From Adineta vaga (Eukaryota; Animalia; Rotifera), in contig CP075492.1 in the NCBI GenBank assembly GCA_021613535.1, positions 10,416,001 through 10,480,000 of the forward strand: 64,000 bases of DNA, written 5' to 3'. Shown here in pieces: positions 35,610 to 53,612 of the stretch. A program made the translations under genes and the position numbers. The notes beneath the pieces are model-generated. The model had not been told where the DNA came from and searched no databases. It saw only the letters and a program-made list of their open reading frames with translations. Each line of letters begins with the position of its first letter. Within the stretch, counting starts at the first letter, position 1.

Positions 35610-38600
35610 TTATTTAATATCACAAAGTAACGCAACTCCACGTAAAATCCAATGTTCTGCTATGTCATTTGATGCTAATTTAAGCATCGTTATAAAATTT
35701 AGATCTGTACGCATTGGTTTCTTATAAACTGGACACATGTAAATATAGGGTGCAAGGGCTACTTGATCATTTCGTTTTCCTCGAAATGATAATTGATTTA
35801 ATTGAAGTTTTTTATTGGTAATCATTGTATTTGGTTGATTTGTTGTTATCGATGGATTAATAGCAAAGATGTGAATAACAGGCATTTGAATATAAACAAT
35901 TTTGTTTTGTGATTCATGTAAACGAGTGTTTTTTCGATCCCAACCAGCACCTTCGATATAAAGACCATAAACATACACACCCTAGGGATGAAGAAATGGA
36001 TTTGAAGATTCAATTTACGACAATTTGTTTACTTCTATTGGTGCTTCGCGAATATCATCTTTATATAAACGAAGTACAGTATTATCAATAGTTACGGTAT
36101 CTAATGACCAGCCTTTATGCATTCGTGTGACTTCTTGTCGCATAGCAGTGAGAAAGCCTGCAATCATAAATATGTTTTATTCTTCACTATTAAAATTTAT
36201 TTACCATTTGGATTAAAAAATCCAGTCATCCAAAAACATTTCGGTCGACCTAGCATCACAAAAGCAATTCATCATACTAATCCAATTACTTTTTTTCTAC
36301 AAACCATAATTTAACCAATTATTATACTGTATATATCGGTCGAGTAATTCTGAAAACCAGAAACCAAGTGTACTACTTTCCCATGAATATCTTGTCTAAA
36401 AAATCAATGCTAAAGCAGTATTCATGTACAATGCTTTAAAACTTACCCAATCACTTGGTACACGACCATCATAAATCGAATCGAGAATTTGTCGAAGTGA
36501 CTAGAATTATATCTCAATATTCTATTCATTTCACTTCTTATTCTTACATCGTTCAAAATTATTATTCCATCAATGGCTAATTGCAAATCATTTAATGAAT
36601 TTCGTACAGTACGTAAAACACGATCAATTCGATGAATTTCTTGTCGTAGAAAGATAATCATTGGATTTAATATTCCCATAGCACGTAATTTCTCTCGTAC
36701 TTCATGTTGAATAAAATTAGCTGGTAATTTTGATAACATATCACTGGCAATATTATGAACAATTTTATCACGTGTTTCACCACCTGTTGTTTGTGAACTT
36801 GTTTCTTTCGGTTGAATATTAACAATTTTTTCTAGCATATATTTTGCTCGATTGGTTGAATATGTTATATTAGCATTTGGATGAAGACCAAAGATTTGTG
36901 GTGAATCAATTAATGGTAGTTTATCAATATAATCGATATAGTCATCCAATCGTTTGATATTTGGAATGAAATAATTATCATAAAATTTAAAATTTGACAA
37001 AAGTAAGGAATCAGAAAACCATTTCTATAGGAAAGAAGTTCATTGATCTAGATTGAGAAAGACAAAATTGATAATTACTTTAGCATAGGTAATCATCAAA
37101 CGACGATCGCGATCATCAGTTATTCTACCACCATATTGAATTTCTGATATCATATATCGAATTGCTTTCCACGAAATACCCTTTAATAAGAATCAAATCA
37201 AATCAAATAATCAATCAGTAAAAATTCTATACGATTTTTGGATTAATATCATCCAAATGATTTTGAATATATTGTACTGATGCTTCCCAATCAGTTTGAT
37301 TAAATTCTACATTAAAAAACAAAGATCCAAAATAACAAATAATAAGCGTTATTTACCATAAGGAATATTCCACCCCAAAGGTCCAAATTTCCGACGTTCC
37401 TAAAGAATAATATGACTTATTACTTTTTTCATACAAAAAAATATATGTACCTGTACGATACTATGAAGAAATGAAGTTGCGTATAACATAGGACGCCAAT
37501 GTGTTGTTTCAAAATATTCTAATTTATCTTGAGTAATCAAACCATAAGTACGTTTTAGACCTGCTCGTACACCTTGTGGTGGTTCATTGGTAAATTTAAT
37601 TGAAGATTGAAGAATTTGAATTGGAAATTGAGGATGAGATTCCGTTGTTAACCAACTAAAGATCAAACATATTTTTGTTCTATGAAGAAAAAAAAACAAT
37701 TACATACGCACGAAATGATGGTTCTAACGTATCGATTGTACTTAAAGCTAAAATAGTCCTCACTATAGAGTTTCAAGCGACATGTTTTTCACTATACTCT
37801 CATAGAATTCTTCTAGACAATCCAATCCTAAATGTGCATTTTGTAATAAAAGCCATCCACCTGATGTAATCGTATGTTGTAGATATCGTCGAGCTAATAT
37901 TTCTTGTCCTTGTCCCATTGATACAATAAATAATTCCACATGTTTTTTCTTTGCTAATACTTGAATGTTCGATGTTGGATCAGCACCAGATGAAAGTAGA
38001 CCAAGTAATGGCGTTCTACAATCACTTTCTTCCCATATTAATTCTAGACTAAGTACTGGAATTTCGACATATTTCTGTCCAAGACTATCTTGTATATAAT
38101 TGCATGCTTCGGATATCGTTCGATCAGGTGATATACATCGAGCAAATAGAAATCGATGAAAAGTATTTAAATTTTCATATGTTTCGGGTAAGAGTGATAG
38201 ATCAGTGGATTCTTTTTCGAACCAATCTTTAAATGCACGTTCATTCTTTTGTAACTAGAAGAAGAAGAAAAGAAAAGAATGAAATTGAAATGATTCACCA
38301 CTTGTCTAGTTTACACGATCGATCACATCATGAAATTCTTTGGTACGACTTAATTCTAATAAATTTAACCATGATAAATCATTTAACCATCGAAATGGTT
38401 TTGATGGACATGTATTTAAATCTAATGAAGCACCGCCTTTAATTAAGACCTCAAATTCATCATAACGTATCTTTCCACGACGTAAATCAATTCGTAAGAT
38501 CATTAATAATGTAAACATTAAACGATCTTCTTCATATAAACCACGTGTTGTATAAAACCATGTTCGATACGTTAAATAATCATTAATATTTTGAATACGT

Positions 38601-41600
38601 TTTTGTATGGCAGCTATTTTTATTGATCTTCATCAAGTTAAAAGAAGAAAAAAAACCGAATCTTTTCGAAAAATGTTTAAGAAAGAGAGATACTTTAACA
38701 TTGAGTCATGAAAAAGACTAAGAAATTGTTGTAGAGATATTTGATACATACGATTGACGAGCTTTGAAAAGGAAAATGTAAAAAGATTGGTGGAAAAAGA
38801 AGAAAACTGATATATATATATATATATACTGCAATTTCTGAGATAAGAAAATAGATAATTGATCCTCGTATGGCTACAGGTCGATATTCTTCACGTGCTG
38901 CACTGATCTTTAATTTCGTTTCTTCAGCAATCAAAACTTTTTCTTTTACATCAATGGCTATACGTTTATTTGCATTGAGTACTTCGACAAGTGATGGATC
39001 ATCAAGTACAGAACCCTAAAAAGTACATTTGAAAAAAATTCTTTTTTCCCAAGAAATTATTCTTACTTCAATACTAGTTAATTTGAGTAAAAGATTTTCT
39101 TCTAATTCTTTTAACATTCGTTTATTTTTAGTTGTTTCACGAGCTAATGTTACTCGTTCACGTTCTAATTCCTAAAAGTTCTCCTTAAAATTCAATGCTC
39201 TGTTTTCAATGTGAAATGTCGAACATACAACACGTTCATTAGCAATAACAAGACTCAATAATTGATCTTCTAATCCACGTTGTGTAACAGTAAAATCAAT
39301 AATTGATACTCGAGCACAGATTTCAGGTGAATACGTTGGATTAGCTAATTTTGTTGTTATATATAAACGAAAAGTATGATTGACATCCTATGATAGAAAG
39401 TTCATTTCAGTTGATGAGTTTTATTCAAACGAACCACTTCACGATCACCAACTTTGACCTAGAATTGTTGAATACGTGATTTGATAAGAAAAAGAATCGA
39501 ATACGTACGCGTAAAGTTGAACCGATTTTGAGATAATTTTTTTCTAGAATATTATCAAGAATAGGATCGAATTCTTCATCAACATCTTCGATTAAGAATG
39601 GTCGACCAAATGATATTGAATCTTCTAATTGTTGACGAAATAATTTCGAATTTAGTGTTGTTATTAACAGATCATTTTCACGTTCCATATTTTTTATCCA
39701 TGATTTTCCTTGTAATTGACTATAAAAAGCATACATTTTTTTTCTTCAATCAAATAATTCAAATTTATTACGGATCAATCAAAAGTGGATAACGATAATT
39801 AGATGTTGCTATAATACCATTTTGATTGGAAAGGTCATCATTTGGTAAACCTTGTAAATTCCATTCACCAATCTAAATACTAACTTTGTGAATAACGATG
39901 CAATATATTATTCTCTTACTGTTGCTTCATCGTTCAATTGTTCAATGATATTAAAATTGTCTGAAAATGGTATAATTCTTTGTTGAATTTGTTTTTGCCA
40001 TTCATTTAACATGCGTTGTCGAAATTCTTGATTAAATGGACCACAATATGAGAGAAAAGCAGTAATCAATATTGCATTTCCAATCAATCTAATATATTCA
40101 TTCGAAATTATAATTCAATTCTAAATAATCTTACTTTTCAATACTCTGTTCAAATATTTTATTTTGTTCATTCCATCGAATTTTCTCTCCTGTTAAACCT
40201 GATATTAATGTATTTGCATCATTCCGTCGTTTCAGTAAAGCATCGTAATCAACTTGATATGTCTAGATTCAAGAGATTATTTATGAACGATTAAGTTTAT
40301 CAAAACAAGTCACTTTTTTAGTTTCCATAGCTGAATCGAAGTCATGTTGACATTTTGCTAGACCAATTTCAGTTCTTTCAAGTTCTCGTTCAGCTCGTGC
40401 TAATTTTCGTGAAGCTTTACGAAGAGAATTTTCTGCTTTTTGAACTTTATCCTGTTCAACAATACGGATAAAAATCTATCACAATAAGTACTTCTTCCTA
40501 CTTTGATAGGAATAACTTCTTTATTAATCGCGTGATAGGATTGAATTTTATCTATGAAAAATTTACAATAAAGATAATGCATAGAATATGAAAGGAAATC
40601 ACCAGTCCACGTTTTTAATGTTGCTAAATCTTTATAAGCTTTTCGAGCTTTTTCTGATAGATCTTTTATTTCAGAATAGGGTGCAAGTAATTCAATAATT
40701 TCATCATTCAATTCACGTATAGTTAATAATGTAGATAGTAAACCGGAATAATTTAAAAGTCGTAAAATTTCAGTTTTCGATGAAGCATAAAAAGGTTCAT
40801 CATGATTATTATCAATTCGAATTGGATCAAGACGTCTTTTCATCAATATCAATGCCATATCGAGAACAATCATAATAGCTTCAGGTGGTTTAGCTAATTT
40901 ACGAAGATTACTAATTGTATTACCTTTGATTTGCTAGAAAACAAATATAATACTCGAATCAACATCACTGTTCAACGTATATTTCATATTCATTACCGAA
41001 AGTTCTGGAATTTCGGTATTAACAACCTCTTATCAACTCTGTCAAAATTACGTACTTTTAACATCTTGTTCTTCATAACCTTATTTTTTGTTGTGTTCTT
41101 AGTTGTTGATTAAAAGATCACAGGACAAATACTGTTATCTTTCCTAACTGCGTTATTTCTCTTCTATATAAAGCTCGAATGAATAAATATAAAACATTCT
41201 ATTTGAAACTTTGGTATTTTTAGTCAAACAATGGTGAAACTTGTAACTGTACTTCTTGCAGCTTTATTGGTTGTTGCTTGTCAAAGTTCTATTATTGGCC
41301 GTACTGGTGCTTATAGAGATCGACCGGAATTATTAGGAAGTTCGGAAGTCAAAGCTTTAGTTAGTTATGCTGCTGAACAATTAGCATTAAAAGATAACAT
41401 TATTCTTGATGATATCAAAGTAACTGGTGTTCAAACTCAAGTCGTTGCTGGTATGAATTATAAAATCAATTTTACTGCTCAACCTGTCAATGGCGCTTCT
41501 GTACAAATGCAAAAATGTGAAGCAATTATTTATGTTCGATTTGATTCAACCAAAACTCTTACAAGTGCTCACTGTGCTTAAATATGAACACAAATTTTCC

Positions 41601-44600
41601 TTTCCGTTTTTTTTTCGAAAAATAAATACTTACCTTTACAGCTTCTTCAGCTTCTTTAAGAATAACTTCCGCAGCAGATAGTTCTTCCTCGGCAATAGCT
41701 TTTTCTTCATTCACTTGTTTAACAAGTATTTCAGCGGTTTCTTTCGATTCTTTAACTTCTTTAGTTTTAATTTCAGCTGCACTTCGTAAAATATCCATTT
41801 CAGCAACTTGCTGTGAAAGAAAATGATTGAAAGAAGAATTCGAAAAAATAGTCAAAGACATATCATACTTTCGCTGCTTCTGTATTAGCACTAGCCATAT
41901 GTTTCTCTTTGACAACTAATTCTTGTGTAATTTCCTGAACTTGCTCAGCAGCTTCAAACAATTTCTGAACACCGGTTTTCATTTTCTGTTTTTCTTTTTC
42001 AAAATATTCTCGTTGCTTTTGATAGTATAACTTAAATGCATTGATAAATCTAAACAAACATCGCAATTATATTGTGATGTATGAAAACAAAATTTCTTTT
42101 TACGAAAGAAATGATTTTGGTGTCACATAAGTTCGTCGACGAAATTTCTCATAATAATTTTCACACATTCGACTAACATCATCATGAATATCTGCCATTA
42201 ATTCAATAACATTCTTTTTAATTGTGTTTGAAGTAATGAGAGTATCAAAACGATTTAGATAAACATTCGAGACAGCAACCAATGCATCTAATGGCCAACG
42301 ATGAAACCAATCGATTGTACAACCAGAAACTAATGCAGGAAATTTCAATGCACGTTCACGAAATTTACGATTATCGGGAGAGAAACAGAGAACGATATGA
42401 AGATTCTTTCGTAATCTTTCACGATAATAATTTAGAAGATTTTCATTTGTTAATGCTCGTTTTGGATATTCTTTTTTCATTTTAACGGATAATTCAGAAA
42501 GTGTTTCATCCATTTCTTCACGTGTAATCAAACCTGAAACCTTGAAAATACGAAGAGAATTCTATGAGTTTTGCTTGAAAAATATTCGTTACTTCTCCAG
42601 AACTTAAAACGTTATTTAAATATTCAAGAAACTGATCATCTTTTATATCGTTATCTGTGAATATAAAAACAATGCCTTGACCAAGACGACCGGCATGTCG
42701 ATAAATATTTCGTAAATCATCCAAGAAATTGTTCAATGTATATGCTCTTCAATAAAAAAAGTATTCTTTTTGAAATTTTATTCGTTAATAATAAATCATT
42801 ACCTTGAAACACTGATTTGCAAATATTTGTATCCTGCAATATAAGCAGCCAGTTTTGTTAAAGATTGTTTTCCACTACCACCAACTCCAACCTGTGAAAA
42901 GCAAAACACGATTTCTTTACTATATGATCGAAATTTCTATCAAACCAATAGTAAATGTCCTTTTGGCATATTAATAACACGTGAAATCTAAAGATATATT
43001 GAACTATGCATTTATTCTTAAGAAAAATATCAACATATTCTTTACTCGAAGTAGATGAATCATAGCATCTTTAAAGAATACTAAATCCATATTACTACCA
43101 CGAATATCTTCATTCATTTTGTTCATATTGCTAGTTAATTTTGTTTCTAATGCTTCCCATGATATCAAAGGTTCATAAACTTTTGGTACTAAATCAGCAA
43201 GATCAATATCATCATCCATATCATCAGTGACTTCCAATTCTTCTCGAAGAAAACTATGAACATGTTAACTGAATATAGTTCAATGTTTCAATTCACAGAC
43301 AAATTACTTTGCAAAATAAACTTCGGCGTCTTCTTGACTAGAAAGTTCATAAATATCTCCAAATGTTTGTTTTGCAATTCGATATTGTTCTTTTCTAAAC
43401 CATTCCTTTTCCGTATGTAAAACCAATCGATCTGATAATACTCGTGTACATTCATGTTTCCATAATTGGAAATATTCTTCGAGATTATTTTGACATTGTT
43501 CTACTTCGATTTGTAAGATTCCTTCCCATATACGAGAAAGATCACGAAGATTGAATATATAATGAAATTTTGCAGGTGTCGGTAGAAATTTCCCTTTCAC
43601 AACTTGCCAAAGAAGTCGTGTTGCAAAAACAGATTTCTGTACGATTTGAATAAGATCAGTGGAAAAGTTTCTTTCGAGACAAAAATATTTTCCGATAGAA
43701 CTAAATATATGATCAACCGCATTATTTGATGGTAATGTACAATTTAAGATAAAAAAATGTCGTTTTAATCGTTCGGGTATATCATTTCGGCCACCACCTG
43801 GATGGCACATTGCTGCCAGAAATTGTAAATCAATAATATTGAGAAAATCACCTGGTTTTGTCAATGAATAAAAGCCTTTTTGTTCAATTAATTGTCGAAG
43901 AATTTCATTGGCTTCTTGATCACCCCAGGCATTTATCATTGGCATATTGATATCATCAATAAAAATGGTCATTTTACGTCCAAATGATGGACCAAATGTA
44001 TTTGCAACACGTTTATCTACGAAATTTTCAATTGTCTTCTGAATAAAACCACTTGTTGTTACCGATGAAAAATTAATTATTCGCGTTAAATGTTGTTCAC
44101 TATCGTAATGTTTTAAAAAACTTGTAATGATAACAGTTTTTGCAGTGCCAGGTTCACCGATTAATAGCACAGCTTTTTCTTGTTTAGACAGAATATTGAT
44201 TAGATAAGTTGTACGAACATTATCAATATTAGGAACAAGTATTGAAGCAAAAGCAATTCTTTCATCTTTTGGATATTCCCAAGATTCAACACGAGTTGAC
44301 CAATGTTCTAAAAACAAAACTCTATCCGTGTCATTTATTTTCGTTCACAAAACGTGATAGTTTATCAAGCGTACCCCATTGTCCACTATCATCGACTAAA
44401 TAATCAAAGAGTGAATCACCTTGATTCACATTCTTTGGAATATCACTATCACCTGAAGTAATAAAATATTGTTCTAATTTAGCTCGATCACTCAATTCTA
44501 ATAATGCACCCATACTAAAAACCCAACATTTCGATCAATTTCTAATCAGTATACAAAAACAGAATCTCTTACCTCCACATAATTGAAAAAATTGTCAATC

Positions 44601-47600
44601 TTTCTAAATAAATTTTGGAATAATCGAATTCTTTATTTAATAATCCATCAAGTAGATCAATAATCTATCAAACAAAATGTAACTGAAAATTTTACTGAGA
44701 AAAACGTATGAGAACCTGTTTGATATAATTACATTCATACACTTTCAATTTCGGTGTACATTTCGTAATTAATAATTTAAATATTTCATCGAAATGTTTT
44801 TCGAGAATTTCAAATATAATAGTACCAATGTTTTTCAATTGTTTATTTGCCCATGCTTGAAATATAGGTCTCCATGGAAGAACAGTTGATGACATAAATA
44901 TCATTCCACAACGTGAAACTGTTGCTGGTGATGCATTATCGATATTATGTACTTCGAAAATTAGTTTAACATTCGATGCCATAGGTATACGATCACCATT
45001 AGCAAGTGTTAATAATTTATTATCATCTAAAACGGAATTTAAATTTTCAATCCATATTGCATCAACGGGACCATCTAAAATGATCCACCATGCTTCTTCT
45101 ACATAGAAATATCATGATATGTTTATAATAAACATCGAAATCAATCACATACGAATGTCTGATTTTGATGAAACTTCATAAGCTTTTAATGTACGACGCC
45201 AAAGAGTTGAAAATATTCCATCTGTCCAATCATTTGTTGCAACATCAAGAATACCGAACATTTGAGAAGCTGTTATCGATTTATCAAGAAGAAGACGATC
45301 AAGAAACGTTTGTTGACTTTGAACAAGTTCATGGGTAACATGTTTTGCACGTTTAAGAAGACGTTCATGAGTAGTACGAAGTATTTCAATCGCTGTTTGT
45401 TCTTCTGATGGTATATCAATTGAATATCGTTTGAAAAGATTATATACTTCCTACAATCAAAAATCAAAAACATCAACTACAAATCTCATTGATTTTTACT
45501 TCTAATGGATCAATTGTATGATCAATAAGAACAAAATTGTCTTTTAAAGTATCTAATGTATTAATCACAAAACGAACATCATCAAGATCTCGTAATTGTC
45601 GATTTAAACGTGGTTCATTCTTTTTCAAAAAATCATTAATACTAATAAATTTCATTCGATAATGTATACGAATATATTTCGCAAATATTAATTCAAGTTG
45701 TCGAACTTCATCGACAAGTGTTCGTTTGAATTTCGTTGTTATATATCGAAATGGTTCGATATTTTTAAATTCAGAAATACGTTTAATTGTATCACGTGTA
45801 TCATCAAAATCAGCAAATAATGCTCGAATAGATGCATAACTTGGATTGGATAGAATGAATTTTTTTGCTTGATGAATTTTATTGATTTCCCAGAGATCTC
45901 GAAAGACATAATATTCTTCTAATTCTTTATCAAATCTATCAAAAAATGAAATGGAAAGAGTTCTAATAGAGAGAAAAAAAGATTACCGAATGCCATTTTC
46001 GAGAAAAAAATTACCAATTGTTTGATATAACTTCAACAATTCTTTATTATTGGCAATTAAATTATAATATGTTTTAACTAGAAGAATAAATCATACGATA
46101 TACAGTATGATCCTCTATTATTAAACACCCCTCCTTAATGAATAACTTGTTATACTGAACGTTTTCCCCAGATCCCAACGGCGTTCACATAAGAGAGGTT
46201 TTACTGTACATCTATTTGACCATCTTTACCTTGTTGTACTTGTTCGGAATCTTGCGCTTTAATGTCAATATCGAAGTTTACATTCGTTGGTGTTATTTCC
46301 AAGTAATTATGTATCAGTTTATAATCAATACTTCGCACTTCACCCCATTTTCGTACACCATAAAAAATATTTAGAACATAACTAATCAATTGATTCATAA
46401 GTTGTTGTATTTCATCAATACTTGGATTAAGAACGATGGAAGATGAATGTAATTCAACATTAGTTAGAATTAATGGATGTTGTATATGATCGATTCGATC
46501 AACATTGGCATCGATTGTATCCATTGGATAAAGACGAAGTTTTTTCAAGCGAGGTTTCATTTGAATTCTAAGGAGAGAGAAATGAAAATACACATGATTT
46601 TTCATCTTACAATGATGAATTTGCTCGATTTTTAATCATTTCAAATGTATTCTTTGCACATAATGTCAATGCTTCGATAAAACGAGTTTCAAATGAACTA
46701 AGAAATTCATTACCTATAAAAACATATACGTTCGTTTCTCACGAGAAGAATCTCCTATTTTACTAACATAATTCATTAAATCGTTCCCATTCGTTCGAAG
46801 GTTGAATCAAAAATTGAGTTGGATTTCTTGATCTTCTTTCTAATTTCGATGAATCTTGAACAAACATTTGTACTGCTAATCTTTCCATTGCTGACAGTTG
46901 CATGATATCTAGAACAAAGCCGTTGAATAACGTTGAAAATCTTATTCTTTAATCCATACCAATATCTGCAAGTTTTTGTTCGAACGGTTTCGAATGATAA
47001 CCAGCTTTATCGAAGAACATTTTGATTACATGCAAAACAGCGGATTCGATTTGCATTGAAATTGCATTGAGTTTTTCTGCTTTTGTAATAATTTGTTCAC
47101 GAATTTCTTGAACAAATTGTTTGAAATCAATTGAATCATCAGGAAATTCGAGAATTTCAAAACGAGATACTTCATGAATTGGTTCTTCAATACGATATAT
47201 TATTAGAGATGATATTTGACCAAGAAAATCCGACATTAAAATAATATTTTCCTCTGCAGGAAGAAATAATTCATCGAGATTTTTCGATAACCAATTAAGA
47301 CGATTTAAACCAATTGAGAGAGTGTTATCAACCTATATAATATCAATAGATGCAGACAAACTATTTGAAAAAGAATCTCTTACTTGTATCATTACTTTTT
47401 CGACCAATTCATAACTTGCTGGATGTGCTTTTGCTAATAATATCGAAAGATCTTTCAATAATTTCTAAAAATAACAAAAGAGCACACACACAAACGCATT
47501 CTTTACTTAATTCTAACTTAGCATACTTTTAATCGTTCATAGGATAATCGAATTCGATTTCTATCTAATAATAATTTATATCCTAAATCTGGCATTGTTA

Positions 47601-50557
47601 CTGAATATCGTGCTAATAATTCACAATCATGTAGAATAACATCAATCAACGGATCATAATTGATATACAATTGTCGTATAACATTTTGTCGAATAAGAAC
47701 TGGATTACACATGACATTTACCACATCAGGTAATGTATTATACCTAAAGTTCTCAATTCTATCCGATTTTTTCGAAATCTATCTAACATGAACTAACCAA
47801 TGACGATGATAGAGAAGTTCATAAATTGAAAAACCATTGATAATATTCATAAAATCTTTCGTAATAGTTTTCATTATAGAATGATCTTTCAATTCGGATC
47901 GTTTTAGAAATTCTACATAAGGATTTTCAATACGTTTATACATTCGTCTTGCCCATAAAATTCGACCTATAATCAAGTTTAATAGTGTTTTATTTTCATT
48001 TTCTTTTACCAATAATTGGCGAATGATCTCTTTCGATTGTCGGTGTTGTTCTACATTGATTATAAAGATGTTTCACTTTCTACAGAAAACAAACGTTTAA
48101 TCTTCGGAATATCAAAATCAAATTTTTCTCTTCACTTGAAGTTCTTCTTTTTCGTACCATTGAATAATATCAATTAAGAATTCATTTGAATCAAAAAATG
48201 GAATGTGTAAATTCTCATATCGAATTAAGAATTTCAAAGCATTGAAAGAATTATGTGATGGAGAATGAAGTATACGATGAAGATCTTTATGAAAGACTTG
48301 ATATAATTTTTGCTAAAACAAAGAATATTTCAAAACGAAGACCAATCATAATCGATTCGTACATCAATATCGGAAAGAATGTTATTTAATTGATTATAAA
48401 ATACATCAAATTGTTGATCATCTGAATCGAAAAAATCGAATTTGAATGTTAAAAATTCTGCACGAGTTTTATTGTAAATCAACGTAATCTGTTCAAGACC
48501 ATCGATTCGTGATTGAGATAATAATGAATAGATTTCAAATGATTCGATAATTTCACAAAGCTATCAACAAGAATCATTCGTGATATGAAGATTTGAATGA
48601 AATAAATTGTTACTTTATTCAAACGTTGATTGACAAAGGCTAATTTACCAAGTACATGACGTTCAGATAAATGATTAGAACTTTGATCAGTATAATGATT
48701 TTCAATTTTTTGTTTAGTTTTCAGAAATATCTCTCGATAGGAATGATATAAATCATTGATATTACGAATACGTTTCAACAATTCATTTGTTTCCAAAAGA
48801 CGAATATCGAATGTATGATTATTAGTTAGATAATCTTTGATACTTATAACTATTTGATTGGTTATCTAAGAGAGCATTCGTCAGTGAGTGAGTGAAGAGA
48901 AAGAGTAAATTCAATACTTACAGTCACAAGTAGAGCAGCAATTTTTTCCGGTTTAGAATAGAATTCTGAACATGAATTAATTAGAACGATAGTATTGAGA
49001 AGATTGGATAGACTTTCTTGAATTTCGTTCTAGAACAAACGGAACGATATCTCGGGATTTTTTCTATGTGATGAATTACCGGTTCATTTGAATAAAGTGG
49101 TCCAATATATTTCGTTAAAATCATCAAATATTTATAATGATCACGTGCTTCATTCATACTTTGTGTTAATTTTTTATCAATTTCTCTCCATTCCTGCAAC
49201 GAAAGATTATTTCATCGAACTTTTTCTTCAATAATTCATTCTTCTACAAACAATTGAACGTGGACTAGCAGCAATATTTAATAGATAAACCACAGCTCGA
49301 TTATAGGGTAGTCGAAGTTGATTCATTACGTAATGTAATTGAATAATTTGTTTTCTCCAATATTTCAATTCATTCAATGGACCAGCATTTACATTGATCT
49401 GTCGAATAGATATACTCTTTCGATAGAACTAGAGAAGTCAACATCGAATTCTATCAATCAAATATTGGCTTTCATACTTTATGAATTTCTTTTATCCATG
49501 CAAACATAGTTTCTTCCGCTTGTTGAACTAATTCAGTATCTTGTGCAAAACGTAATAATGAATTAGGATGAATAATTTCTTGTGTATCATGTCGTAAACG
49601 TATGGGTACGTTTTGTAATCGTATACTATCCATCAATGAATCATGAATTGTTCGAAAAAAATCAGCATTTTGTTTCATTTGATAGACTAATTGAAATTTT
49701 ATTCGATTCGTATTTTCATTGACAAGACTCAATCGATTCCATTCTTCTGCTTTCTTTATTGACGGTAGATAACTGAGTAATCCTACTTCAAGATTGATCA
49801 TTAAATCAAAATTTGGTAATTCGAAATTCATGGAAAAAATGATTAATTCCTACAGAAAATTGATGTTCTTCTATATAAATATTCATGAAAATCGCGTACA
49901 TTTTTATAATTTTTATCTGTTAATTTAATTGTATTTGGTTTGATAAAAATTACACCACCATCTTCGAATGGTTTATCTATTCCTATCTAATATGAAATTG
50001 ATTATAAAGGAAAGACTTCATCGATTAGATTAACATACTCCGATACATGTTTCTTCAACTTTCGTCGTTCGATTAAAATTTGATAAAGCTAATCAAGATT
50101 AACATCAGTATTAACATTTGAATTCAACAAAATATATTTACCTATATTTGATCCTTTACTAAGACGATTTCTTTCATAAAGATCACAATAAAATATCGGT
50201 AAAATATGTATATTTTCATCATTCAAAAATCGTTGTATAAGATTCCACTGAAATTCATAATCCAATCTCGATCATTTTTCATAGATATTCTCTACATACA
50301 TTTTGTGTTTCTTGACAGTAATCTGCAACTAAATTCGATTGAGAATTAAAAAAGAATGCTAAGATATCAAAAAGATATGTATGAACATTATTAATCGTTG
50401 TATTATTTAAAAGTTCTTTAATCGATATCTCCTCTTCATGATCTTCTCTTTCTTCAATAGTTGATCCGATAATAGGTTGTAATTGTTCATCAATCGATTG
50501 AACAAGAAGATTATTCATATCAATTTCCGATTGTTTAATATTGCTTTTAGTCGCCAT
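35610..50557 (-). CDS. Axonemal outer-arm dynein heavy chain (DNAH5/8-type) lacking linker, AAA1 and N-half of AAA2
   Basis: Tail motifs ([17 protein letters not shown]), [37 protein letters not shown]3 [11 protein letters not shown]4 [24 protein letters not shown]-terminal [14 protein letters not shown]-stop; no GPAGTGKT P1 loop found. Confidence 0.9.
41165..41173 (+). promoter_or_regulatory. TATA box of nested cystatin
   Basis: TATATAAAG 66 nt upstream of the cystatin ATG. Confidence 0.55.
41231..41581 (+). CDS. Secreted cystatin, intronless, nested antisense in a dynein intron
   Basis: Signal peptide, N-terminal Gly (TGA), QVVAG motif, NYKINF, two C-terminal Cys; AATAAA at 41621-41626. 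Confidence 0.9.
   Translation: MVKLVTVLLAALLVVACQSSIIGRTGAYRDRPELLGSSEVKALVSYAAEQLALKDNIILDDIKVTGVQTQVVAGMNYKINFTAQPVNGASVQMQKCEAIIYVRFDSTKTLTSAHCA
46103..46206. mobile_element. Tc1/mariner (pogo/Tigger-like) MITE remnant in a dynein intron
   Basis: TA|CAGTATGATCCTCT ... AGAGGTTTTACTG|TA: degenerate CAGT-start TIRs with TA flanks, inside enlarged intron 46078-46229. Confidence 0.65.
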
Positions 50558-50830: not shown

Positions 50831-53612
50831 ATGGCCCATGAAATACTCAAAAAGCTTTGTTCAGGATTACCATTAAACCCTTTACCACCACCAAAAACAT
50901 CGCGTCATACCGATGTTCCACATGCACCGGATAGAAAACCAGCATTATCTAACGAAGAACGAAAAGTAATGTAGACAATTTTTCAAAGTTACTTAGGAAG
51001 AAAAAGAAGTATTTGATTTTAGTTAGCGATTAAAAATGCACTTCGTTATTTTCCATCGAATGTTCAATTAGAACTTGTTGATGAATTTAAATATGAAATG
51101 GATACATATGGACATATATACATGTATCGATTTCAACCAGATATTGAAATGCGTGCATATCCAATTGATGAATATCCATGTAAATGTAAAGCAGCCGCAG
51201 GAATTATGCTAATGATAATGAATAATTTGGATAAAAGAGTTGCTCAATTTCCTGATGAATTAGTTACATATGGTGGAAATGGACAAGTGTTCTCAAATTG
51301 GGCCCAAGTAAATAATCGGAGTAATCTGTTAACGCAATAAAGAAGATATTTGTTTAAAAATAATTTAGTTTTTAATGGTTATGAATTATTTGAGTATTAT
51401 GACAGATGAACAAGTTCTTGTTATGTATTCAGGACATCCTATGGGTTTATTTCCAACGCGAACTGAATTTTCACCACGAGTGGTCATTACAAATGGTTTA
51501 GTAAGTTGAATACATTCAAAAGCTAATCTAGAAAAATGTTTGTATCAATTTAGGTCATTCCAAATTATTCATCAAGCAGCGATTATGAACGTATGTTTGC
51601 ACTTGGTTGTACCATGTACGTTAAATCAAAAATTTGATAGAATGAAATGAAAAAATTGTATGAGTAGGTATGGTCAGATGACAGCTGGATCCTATTGTTA
51701 TATTGGACCACAGGGTATCGTACATGGCACGTTTGTATGTATCGAAAATTATGCTTTTGAAAAGAGAACTTGTTCTTTAAAATAATCTGTTTATATTAGA
51801 TTACAATTATGAATGCTGGTCGAAAGAAACTTGGTACAAATGATCTTCGTGGAAAAGTTTTTCTTTCATCAGGTAATTTTTGATAGAGAAAACTATCTGA
51901 ATCATAAATTGATGAATTATTAGGCATGGGTGGAATGTCTGGTGCTCAATCGAAGGCATGTCAACTTCTTGGATGTATTGGTGTGATTGCAGAGGTAAGT
52001 GAAGAAGCCGCGAAAAAACGACATAATCAAGGCTGGTGTCAAGAATTGATCTATGATCTCAATCAACTCATTGATCGAATCCGAGAATGTCGAGAAAAGA
52101 AAATTTCACGTGCAATTGGTTATGTTGGAAATGTAGTTGACGTATGGTGAGATAGTTAGTCTCATTTTAATCGAATCATCGAATATGTCATGAATTTATA
52201 TAGGGAACGTTTAGCAACTGAAAAAGAAACATTAGTTGATCTTGGTTCTGATCAAACATCATGTCACATTCCGTATCATGGAGGATATTACCCAGTTCAA
52301 GTAGATGATGAGAAATTATTGTCAATTCATTTATTAATTAAGATTTTAGTTGTCCTATGATGAAGCTCGACAATGTATGAAAGATAATCCAGAAAAATTT
52401 AAGGATCTTGTTCATGAAAGGTTGATTTGATTGTTTCGATCTGATTTTTGTTTACCTTGATATATATTTAGTATCCGACGTCAAATTGTCGCTATTGATA
52501 AATTATATGAACGCGGAATGTATTTTTTTGATTATGGAAATGCATTTTTACTTACAGCTAAGCGTGCAGGTGAAATTTAATTTTTTCGAAATCGTATGAA
52601 TAAAAAGTCTTCTGTATTAGGTGCTGCTGTTGGTGGTAATGATGATAAACGTTGTATTCGTTTCAAATATCCATCATACGTTCAAGATATAATGGGAGAT
52701 ATATTTTCACTTGGTTTTGGTCCATTTCGGTTCGAACTCATTTGTTATTATTCAATAATTATCTTTTATTTAGATGGGTGTGTGCATCTGGTTTAGAAAG
52801 TGATCTTCAACAAACAGACGCTATTGCTCGAAATGTTATTGAAAAACTTATGTCTACTGAAAATAGTAAGTGTTAGATGAGGTTAATCTATTGCATAGAA
52901 ATAACATTTTGTAGCTCCAAATAATGTACTTGAACAATATGAAAGTAACTTAAGATGGATTCGAGAAGCTTGTGATGCAAAATTGGTAGTTGGTTCACAA
53001 GCACGAATTCTTTATTCGGATCAAGTCGGTCGAATTAATATTGGTTTAGCATTTAATGAAGCTGTACGAAATGGTCAATTGAAAGGACCTATTATTCTTT
53101 CAAGAGATCATCATGATGTCTCTGGAACAGATTCACCTTTTCGTGAAACAGCAAACATTGAAGATGGATCTGCATTTTGTGCTGGTATATATATGACATC
53201 AAATTCAATTCTTTTCTAATTGAATTCTATTCAGATATGTCAGTACAAAATATTATTGGAGATTCATTTCGTGGTGCAACATGGGTATCATTACATAATG
53301 GTGGTGGTGTAGGTTTTGGTGAAGTAATGAATGGTAAAGAACACGACATTTCAATGTTGTCTTATCGAAAAAGTATAAATCTATTTTCATTTAGGTGGTT
53401 TTGGTATGTTTCTTGATGGAAGTGCAAAGGCTGATGAGAACATTCGACAAATGTTGTATTGGGATGTTATCAATGGTGTTAGTCGACGTACGTGGGCAGG
53501 AAATAAGAATGCACGACAAACAGTCGAACGCGCAATGTCGAAAGAATCTAAACTAAAAGTAACATTACCAAATGATGTAACAGAAGAATGTATGAAGAAG
53601 CTATCAATATGA
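50831..53612 (+). CDS. UROC1: Urocanate hydratase (eukaryotic type), multi-exon
   Basis: NALRYFP, GHIYMYRF, AQFPDELVTYGGNGQVFSNWAQ, YGQMTAGSYCYIGPQGIVHGT, GMGGMSGAQ, SDQTSCH, SRDHHDVSGTDSPFRET, HNGGGVG. Confidence 0.97.

What the first reader, a model, noticed from the sequence alone, without database searches (positions are those of the whole stretch)
45153..45450. Axonemal dynein heavy chain with an in-frame deletion of linker, AAA1 and the AAA2 P-loop
Seen: one uninterrupted exon reads [86 protein letters not shown], with the junction near 45282/45283 and no intron or stop. Known: in DNAH5/8 the left part is the end of the tail, and the right part (NPKAITAPQMFG..DWTDG) lies in AAA2, roughly 900 aa further on (from memory). 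The linker (power-stroke lever) and AAA1 (main ATPase, GPAGTGKT) lie between them; only the AAA3 (about 44135-44158) and AAA4 (about 42865-42891) P-loops remain. The exons I checked elsewhere splice in frame. Inference: a motor-dead dynein that could act as a tether or brake, a recent deletion allele, or an assembly misjoin. An in-frame join has a 1-in-3 chance at random, and strong conservation of the AAA3-6 sequence favours a recent event.
Basis: partly seen in the sequence, partly recalled or inferred. Interest (0 to 1): 0.85.

Follow-up and report, generated by a model that had tools for sequence, protein, structure and literature searches.

The report
Old shared deletion in rotifer dynein
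A rotifer ciliary dynein motor gene has lost the 4-kb stretch that encodes its lever and main ATPase. The same breakpoint turns up in many divergent bdelloid rotifers, next to an intact version in at least one species, so it is an old, persistent gene form and neither a recent accident nor an assembly error.

Summary
Exon 45153-45450 (minus strand) joins DNAH5 residues about 1279-1332 directly to 2292-2328. No linker or AAA1 sequence lies in the window. The gene is otherwise a clean model of 53 exons and 3,671 codons.

The same junction occurs in independent metagenome contigs of at least eight divergent bdelloid lineages (synonymous divergence, dS, up to about 1.5).

Three things complicate the "motor-dead dynein" reading:
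- **Intact copies exist.** Intact orthologues ("I") with working AAA1/AAA2 motifs are present, and in one species the I and deleted ("D") forms share 100%-identical flanks in one assembly graph.
- **The junction frame is not conserved.** It is in frame here and in three other lineages, but carries +1 nt in three lineages and +16 nt with a stop in another.
- **Both halves stay constrained.** Both sides of the junction remain under strong purifying selection (omega 0.03-0.2) everywhere.

My best reading is an ancient deletion haplotype or copy of a redundant gamma-type outer-arm dynein paralogue. It coexists and exchanges sequence with the intact form, and it happens to be in frame in this genome.

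A truly functional AAA1-less dynein, a split gene, or programmed excision remain open.

The parts
45153..45450 (-). Junction exon (298 nt). Its first 56 codons are the end of the tail or neck and its last 43 codons are in AAA2.
45282..45283 (-). Deletion junction, ...CTT GAT | AAA TCG.... About 969 residues of a DNAH5-like reference are missing here.
35610..50557 (-). Whole predicted coding region: 53 modelled exons from 50416 to 35613, a probable ATG near 50557, and a TAA stop at 35612-35610.
45283..50557 (-). Tail (DHC_N1-type), 25-32% identical to the DNAH5-like reference.
   Evidence: collinear PF08385 hits
44375..45282 (-). Remnant of AAA2: the C-terminal part of the large domain and the lid. 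The Walker A motif is absent.
43308..44307 (-). AAA3 exon (PF12775 5e-65, AAA_lid_1). P-loop GEPGTAKT at 44158..44135.
42104..42891 (-). AAA4 (PF12780 3e-41). P-loop GVGGSGKQ at 42888..42865.
40483..42049 (-). Stalk coiled coil and microtubule-binding region, including a 700-nt intron (40934-41633). No Pfam hit. 33% identical to reference residues 3299-3425.
35613..40444 (-). AAA5, AAA6, lid and C-terminal domain (PF12781, PF03028, PF18198, PF18199).

Best explanation
The window carries the deleted form ('D') of a bdelloid-rotifer paralogue of the outer-arm gamma dynein heavy chain (DNAH5/8 type). One genomic deletion of about 4 kb, with both breakpoints inside exons and no obvious microhomology, removed the linker, AAA1 and the N-terminal half of AAA2.

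Shown:
- The deletion happened once, long ago, because the junction is identical to the nucleotide in many divergent lineages.
- The D form has persisted alongside the intact form ('I'), which is still a constrained, canonical motor gene.
- In at least one species both forms are present with identical flanks.
- The junction itself drifts between lineages (0, +1, +16 nt, and a secondary loss).

Inferred:
- The fused reading frame is not what selection keeps.
- The strong constraint on the exons on both sides comes mainly from continued exchange (recombination or gene conversion) with the intact allele or copy, or from time spent on it.
- The D form is tolerated because other gamma-type heavy chains exist (C6, C5, C2).

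In this genome the junction happens to be in frame. If the gene is expressed, it would give a heavy chain of about 3,700 aa. That protein would have the tail, AAA3 to AAA6, the stalk and the C-terminal domain. It would lack the lever and the main ATPase, so it could dock and perhaps bind microtubules but could not perform a power stroke.
For: - **Anatomy:** (junction; no AAA1 or linker in the window; open 3,671-codon model that lacks only reference residues 1325-2293).
- **Same junction elsewhere:** L019 and L025, L023, L030-32, L035-38, L115, and the in-frame ORFs P0153-P0155.
- **Intact orthologues:** L029/L033 hold DHC_N2 and AAA_6 between the two halves. Others are L026, L024, L028, L041 and L042. 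The I-specific segment has omega 0.118, with AAA1 Walker A/B and the AAA2 motif GPSGAGKT intact.
- **Coexistence:** L041 overlaps the D contigs L035 and L023 by exactly 127 nt at 100% identity on each side, the signature of a bubble branch in a de Bruijn assembly graph.
- **Constraint:** omega is 0.03-0.2 for tail and motor in all pairs, with dS 0.18-1.7.
- **Junction phase varies**.
- **No intact copy in this assembly:** the best match of I-specific DNA is 74%, to the paralogue on C2.
Against: - No read data for this genome, so I do not know whether an intact allele exists here.
- Four samples of the species that has both forms give D contigs running straight through the junction. A fixed 1:1 heterozygote would not easily do that.
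- If D lineages truly lack the intact form, exchange cannot explain their low omega, and the D form (or its two halves) must itself be functional.
- A neutral deletion should not survive loss of heterozygosity across such deep splits, so some selection or a separate locus is needed.
- The AU test does not reject a single clade of all D lineages (p 0.33).
- The same right breakpoint recurs in a different, smaller deletion (L039), which this model does not explain.
Confidence: 0.45

Rival explanations
1. A selected, functional motor-dead dynein. The D form is fixed in this and other species. Its product, which has the tail, AAA3-6 and the microtubule-binding stalk but no lever or AAA1, is incorporated into cilia as a passive tether, brake or regulator.
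For: The ORF is complete and has canonical introns. By a three-point estimate, omega is about 0.10 (motor) and about 0.23 (tail) on the window's own long terminal branch. Four distinct in-frame lineages exist. D contigs run through the junction in most samples, with no intact branch. No intact copy is present in the haploid assembly.
Against: At least four lineages carry the junction out of frame (+1, or +16 with a TAA stop) and yet are equally constrained. One lineage has lost the second half of the exon (L034). The microtubule-binding exon has no Pfam hit. Expression is untested.
Confidence: 0.25
2. A split gene. After the deletion, the tail (about 1,290 aa) and the motor remnant (from the conserved Met in ...SQMFG...) are used as two separate products. 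The frame across the junction is then irrelevant, and the in-frame state here is incidental.
For: Both halves are constrained independently of junction phase, even between two +1 lineages (L019 against L035/L023: omega 0.12 for the tail and 0.03 for the motor). All exons of the +1 contigs are intact.
Against: No promoter, trans-splice acceptor or start signal for the second half was found. L019 has no AG near the junction. Eukaryotic ribosomes rarely initiate at an internal Met so far downstream. No RNA data.
Confidence: 0.12
3. Programmed (developmental) excision. The intact gene is germ-line DNA and the D form is made from it by site-specific removal in somatic nuclei, so both forms occur in one animal with identical flanks.
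For: I and D have 100%-identical flanks in one assembly graph. The same right breakpoint is used with two different left partners (D, and L039). The junction is identical across deep lineages. The extra C of the +1 form equals the next native base of that species' intact copy.
Against: I found no report of DNA elimination in rotifers. The one paper that held both 'bdelloid' and 'programmed DNA elimination' in its title or abstract mentions elimination only for ciliates and nematodes. The junction variants look like fixed mutations within each lineage. Intact contigs also run through the boundaries without a D branch (L029, L026). No boundary motif was identified.
Confidence: 0.07
4. A recent private deletion or an assembly misjoin in this genome.
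For: None beyond the prior that a single odd join in one assembly is often an artefact.
Against: The identical junction occurs in more than 12 independent contigs from other lineages and samples.
Confidence: 0.02

Closest known systems
Outer-arm axonemal dynein gamma heavy chain (human DNAH5/DNAH8; Chlamydomonas gamma, PDB 7kzm_C)
   Same: These are the best PDB matches for the junction exon. The gene has a collinear DHC_N1 tail, AAA3, AAA4, AAA5, AAA6, lid and C-terminal domain.
   Different: It lacks the linker (PF08393), AAA1 (PF12774) and the AAA2 Walker A motif. The tail is only 25-32% identical and the motor 35-59% identical to the reference. That is more divergent than the paralogues on C6 and C5 of the same genome (50-70%).
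Intact orthologues of the same bdelloid gene (metagenome contigs L029/L033, L041, L026, L028)
   Same: They share the exon structure and have 72-98% amino-acid identity in the flanking exons, with identical sequence up to both breakpoints.
   Different: They carry 3.7-7.7 kb between the two halves. That stretch encodes the linker, AAA1 (Walker A/B intact) and AAA2 GPSGAGKT.
Functionally diverged former alleles in bdelloids
   Same: The idea is that two long-lived versions of one locus coexist in an asexual lineage.
   Different: Here the flanks of the two versions are identical rather than deeply diverged. Whether they are alleles at all is untested.
Pseudogene copies kept similar to their parent gene by gene conversion (for example human CYP21A1P/CYP21A2; from my own knowledge)
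   Same: A defective copy carries a diagnostic deletion, and its remaining exons stay close to the working gene.
   Different: No second locus was found in this assembly, and conversion was not demonstrated.

Membership tests
Axonemal dynein heavy chain, outer-arm gamma (DNAH5/8) type | N-terminal tail (DHC_N1) | tested here: met
   Collinear PF08385 hits on four tail exons, the best at 2.4e-7. tblastn to the DNAH5-like protein P0102 covers residues 162-1278.
Axonemal dynein heavy chain, outer-arm gamma (DNAH5/8) type | Linker (DHC_N2, PF08393) | tested here: not met
   No PF08393 hit in C3:10416001-10480000, although 70 hits were found elsewhere in the genome. Reference residues 1325-2293 are absent from the model.
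Axonemal dynein heavy chain, outer-arm gamma (DNAH5/8) type | AAA1 with Walker A/B (PF12774), the main ATPase | tested here: not met
   No PF12774 hit in the window. The only P-loops found are those of AAA3 and AAA4.
Axonemal dynein heavy chain, outer-arm gamma (DNAH5/8) type | AAA2 nucleotide pocket | tested here: not met
   Only the part from ...[10 protein letters not shown] onward remains. The GPSGAGKT motif seen in the intact orthologues is missing.
Axonemal dynein heavy chain, outer-arm gamma (DNAH5/8) type | AAA3 to AAA6, lid and C-terminal domain | tested here: met
   PF12775 5e-65, PF12780 3e-41, PF12781 2e-18, PF03028 1e-18, PF18198, PF18199.
Axonemal dynein heavy chain, outer-arm gamma (DNAH5/8) type | Stalk with microtubule-binding domain | tested here: inconclusive
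   The region aligns to reference residues 3299-3425 at 33%, but the exon has no Pfam hit. Binding cannot be tested with these tools.
Processed or decaying pseudogene | Stops, frameshifts, loss of introns, dN/dS near 1 | tested here: not met
   53 GT-AG introns are kept, there is no stop in 3,671 codons, and omega is about 0.1-0.2. Relatives, however, are frameshifted at the junction only.

The most novel reading that the evidence does not exclude
The intact and deleted forms are two long-lived, co-inherited versions of one locus. Either both are needed (balanced, functionally diverged former alleles, with the deleted one supplying a tail-only or motor-dead regulator), or the deleted form is regenerated from the intact one by site-specific DNA excision in somatic cells. 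Either reading would explain the nucleotide-identical junction across deep bdelloid lineages, the identical flanks within a species, and the reuse of the right breakpoint.
Probability: 0.15. Interest if true: 0.9.

Novelty: new variant of a known kind. Interest (0 to 1): 0.62.

Why it matters
A dynein heavy chain without the lever and the main ATPase is not itself a new idea. What is unusual is the population genetics.

One in-exon deletion junction is preserved to the nucleotide across rotifer lineages separated by saturating synonymous divergence. It sits next to an intact, constrained version of the same gene. Both sides remain under strong purifying selection although the junction frame drifts.

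In a group famous for asexuality, gene conversion and loss of heterozygosity, such persistence needs an explanation. Candidates are balanced alleles, exchange between copies, a use for the fragments, or regulated excision. The locus is small enough to test each of these by PCR and long reads.

It is also a warning for annotation. Haploid reference assemblies of bdelloids may show only one of two structurally different versions of a gene.

Tried and rejected
- **Hidden intron across the junction.** I looked for one that would restore the frame in the +1 relatives. No shared GT...AG pair exists, and L019 has no AG near the junction. Rejected.
- **Skipping the junction exon.** At 298 or 299 nt, skipping it breaks the frame in both forms. 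Rejected.
- **Breakpoints at ancestral intron positions (an RNA-mediated event).** The right breakpoint lies 20 nt inside an exon of the intact copies, and the left breakpoint is also exonic. Rejected.
- **Microhomology or direct repeats at the breakpoints.** None was convincing.
- **Micro-synteny between the window and the C6 or C5 paralogue regions.** No shared neighbours were found, so I do not call C6 the ohnologue.
- **A tree to prove that I and D interleave.** It is poorly resolved, and the AU test does not reject D monophyly. The pairwise dS pattern (L030-D against L026-I = 0.18) is suggestive only.
- **Rotaria sp. Silwood2 hit (P0013/L020).** It looked like a further D copy but is an I-type relic with in-frame stops.
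- **L034.** I first read it as an independent deletion. It is better explained as a secondary loss between the 16-nt filler seen in L115 and the end of the exon.
- **Read evidence.** I did not try further, so read laying was never used.
- **Literature.** Searches gave nothing on this gene, and nothing on DNA elimination in rotifers.

Full report
**1. Observation**

The gene lies on the minus strand. window:45153-45450:- reads [56 protein letters not shown]|[43 protein letters not shown] without a stop. It is bounded by a canonical acceptor and donor.

phmmer against PDB chains aligns residues 1-54 to human DNAH5 (8j07_n0) 1279-1332 and residues 55-91 to 2292-2328. The same split appears against 9fqr_I3 and Chlamydomonas gamma heavy chain 7kzm_C. 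About 960 residues are therefore skipped inside one exon, between window bases 45283 and 45282.

The window is G000:C3:10416001-10480000 of a 100.8-Mb, six-contig, 30% GC genome. By these features and the relatives found it is a bdelloid rotifer. I take it to be an Adineta vaga-type haploid assembly, which is my inference. Six-frame scans of the whole genome with PF12774 (AAA1) and PF08393 (linker) find many dyneins but nothing in this window.

**2. The gene in the window**

Guided by relatives, I built a model inside scripts only. It has 53 exons from 50416 to 35613, all GT-AG, with 3,671 codons and no stop. A probable ATG lies near 50557 and a TAA stop at 35612-35610.

Against a DNAH5-like full-length protein (P0102), the model lacks only residues about 1325-2293.

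Exon-by-exon Pfam searches, all by reference, gave these results:
- DHC_N1 pieces, collinear along the tail exons.
- AAA_7 (5e-65), with the AAA3 P-loop GEPGTAKT at 44158..44135.
- AAA_8 (3e-41), with the AAA4 P-loop GVGGSGKQ at 42888..42865.
- AAA_9, Dynein_heavy, AAA_lid_11 and Dynein_C.
- No Pfam hit for the microtubule-binding exon.

That step is left out.

The closest paralogues in the genome are intact and nearer to DNAH5 than the window gene is. They are C6:3576340-3592857, a gene on C5 and one on C2. No neighbour synteny with C6 or C5 was seen.

**3. The junction is old and shared**

I searched with the 99-aa exon against protein representatives, against 90% clusters and against JGI metagenome contigs. 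I then fetched the encoding contigs. This yielded three kinds of relative.

(a) 'D' contigs carry the same junction:
- L019 and L025 come from two samples. They have urocanase next door, as in the window.
- L023 and L035-37 come from four samples of a single species.
- The others are L038, L030-32 and L114/L115, plus the ORFs P0153 and P0155.

(b) 'I' contigs carry the intact gene:
- L029/L033 is a 28-kb contig in which the two halves lie 7.7 kb apart with DHC_N2 and AAA_6 between them.
- L041 and L042 have the halves 3.7 kb apart.
- L026 (= L040) and L024 cover the right boundary, with GPSGAGKT upstream.
- L028 covers the left boundary and runs on into the linker.

(c) Odd cases:
- L039 has intact AAA1 exons followed by a deletion of about 560 nt. 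Its right breakpoint is the same nucleotide as in D.
- L034 has lost the second half of the exon.
- The Rotaria sp. Silwood2 relic L020 is I-type with in-frame stops.

Alignments of the junction show:
- GAT|AAATCG in the window, L030, P0153-P0155.
- GAT C AAATCG (or AAAGCA) in L019, L023/L035 and L038.
- GAT ATGAGAGAATATTCGT AAATCG in L115, which creates an in-frame TAA.

The breakpoints are exonic and have no evident repeat.

**4. Coexistence**

L041 (I) overlaps L035 and L023 (D+1) by exactly 127 nt at 100% identity on each side, and it ends there. That is the signature of one branch of a bubble in a k=127 de Bruijn assembly graph, so both forms were present in that sample with identical flanks. 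The contigs of this species are 99.7-99.9% identical across six samples.

The extra C of its D form equals the first native base after GAT in its I form.

Four samples of the same species nevertheless give D contigs that run through the junction. Several I contigs of other lineages likewise run through their boundaries. A simple fixed 1:1 heterozygote in every animal is therefore not obviously right.

**5. Selection**

Nei-Gojobori estimates on exon-anchored codon alignments:

| Comparison | dS | omega (tail) | omega (motor) |
|---|---|---|---|
| window vs L019 | about 1.2 | 0.11-0.16 | 0.05-0.08 |
| window vs L030 | 0.57 | 0.20 | 0.12 |
| window vs L029 (I) | 0.6-0.8 | not estimated | 0.11-0.15 |
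| L019 vs L035/L023 (both +1) | 1.2-2.1 | 0.12 | about 0.03 |

L030 (D) against L026 (I) has dS of only 0.18.

A three-point estimate puts omega on the window's own terminal branch at about 0.10 (motor) and 0.23 (tail). Apart from the junction, every exon of the +1 contigs is intact.

The I-specific segment is itself constrained: omega is 0.118 between L041 and L033. Its AAA1 Walker A/B and the AAA2 P-loop are canonical.

An ML tree of the right flank is poorly resolved, and an AU test does not reject all D lineages forming one side of a branch (p 0.33). The case for coexistence therefore rests on the bubble contigs, not on the tree.

**6. Interpretation**

Shown:
- The deletion is real, has a single origin, is old, and is shared across lineages.
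- The intact form persists and is functional-looking.
- Both forms occur together in at least one species.
- The junction frame is not conserved.
- The remaining exons are strongly constrained everywhere.
- The copy in this genome is a complete in-frame ORF.

Inferred: selection does not act on the fused frame. The constraint comes either from exchange with the intact form (my preferred reading, 0.45) or from direct use of the product or its halves (0.25 and 0.12). Programmed excision would also fit the identical flanks and the reused right breakpoint. It has no precedent in rotifers that I could find (0.07).

A paper on A. vaga reports about 200 ancestral deletions in the laboratory clone, used as a baseline for radiation-induced hemizygous deletions (PMC13564844). 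Standing structural differences between the homologues are therefore plausible in this animal. An intact allele would appear as an insertion relative to this reference and would not show in such coverage scans.

**7. Limits**

I stopped there, so there is no read-level evidence on zygosity or expression for this genome.

The haploid assembly has no close copy of the I-specific DNA. The best match is 74%, to the paralogue on C2. That cannot exclude an intact second haplotype.

dS values above 1 are near saturation, and L019 has a different GC3 (0.36 against 0.10-0.17).

**8. Verdict**

'Misjoin' and 'recent' are refuted. 'Motor-dead dynein' remains possible but is not the best-supported reading. 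The finding is an ancient, trans-lineage deletion form of a redundant gamma-type dynein paralogue that coexists with its intact counterpart. How it persists is unresolved.

Noticed in passing
L039:1-300: In another bdelloid lineage the intact-type gene has a smaller deletion of about 560 nt (...VKRIRTKDPEDT|KSITASQ...). Its right breakpoint is the same nucleotide as in the common deletion. It is out of frame. The reuse of this breakpoint is unexplained.
   Followed up: partly
L115:1490-1515 and L034:1812-1895: The junction in L115 carries a 16-nt filler that resembles the 3' end of the same exon and creates TCG TAA A, an in-frame stop. L034 appears to have lost the sequence between the filler and the exon end.
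   Followed up: partly
L115:2380-4734 (minus strand); L035:4826-7393: A 784-aa TPR (NPHP3-like) gene sits right after the exon that corresponds to window 44664-44575. L035 has a 2.5-kb intron at the same place, whereas the window's intron there is about 58 nt. This may be a nested gene or an insertion.
   Followed up: no
window 40934-41633: An unusually long intron of about 700 nt lies in the stalk region of a gene whose other introns are about 45-70 nt. Its content was not examined.
   Followed up: no
window 44135-44158: The AAA3 Walker A motif reads GEPGTAKT, with Ala at the second conserved Gly of the GxxGxGKT pattern. I did not check whether this is usual for gamma-type heavy chains.
   Followed up: no
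window 51023-53609 (+): A urocanase gene lies head to head with the dynein. The same neighbour is present in L019, so this synteny is conserved across a deep bdelloid split.
   Followed up: partly
L020:5726-6200 (Rotaria sp. Silwood2, CAJNSZ010003672.1): Only a relic of this dynein remains: one tail exon plus the start of the linker, with in-frame stops. It lies between unrelated genes and is annotated as a 74-aa protein.
   Followed up: partly
I did not examine either.
   Followed up: no
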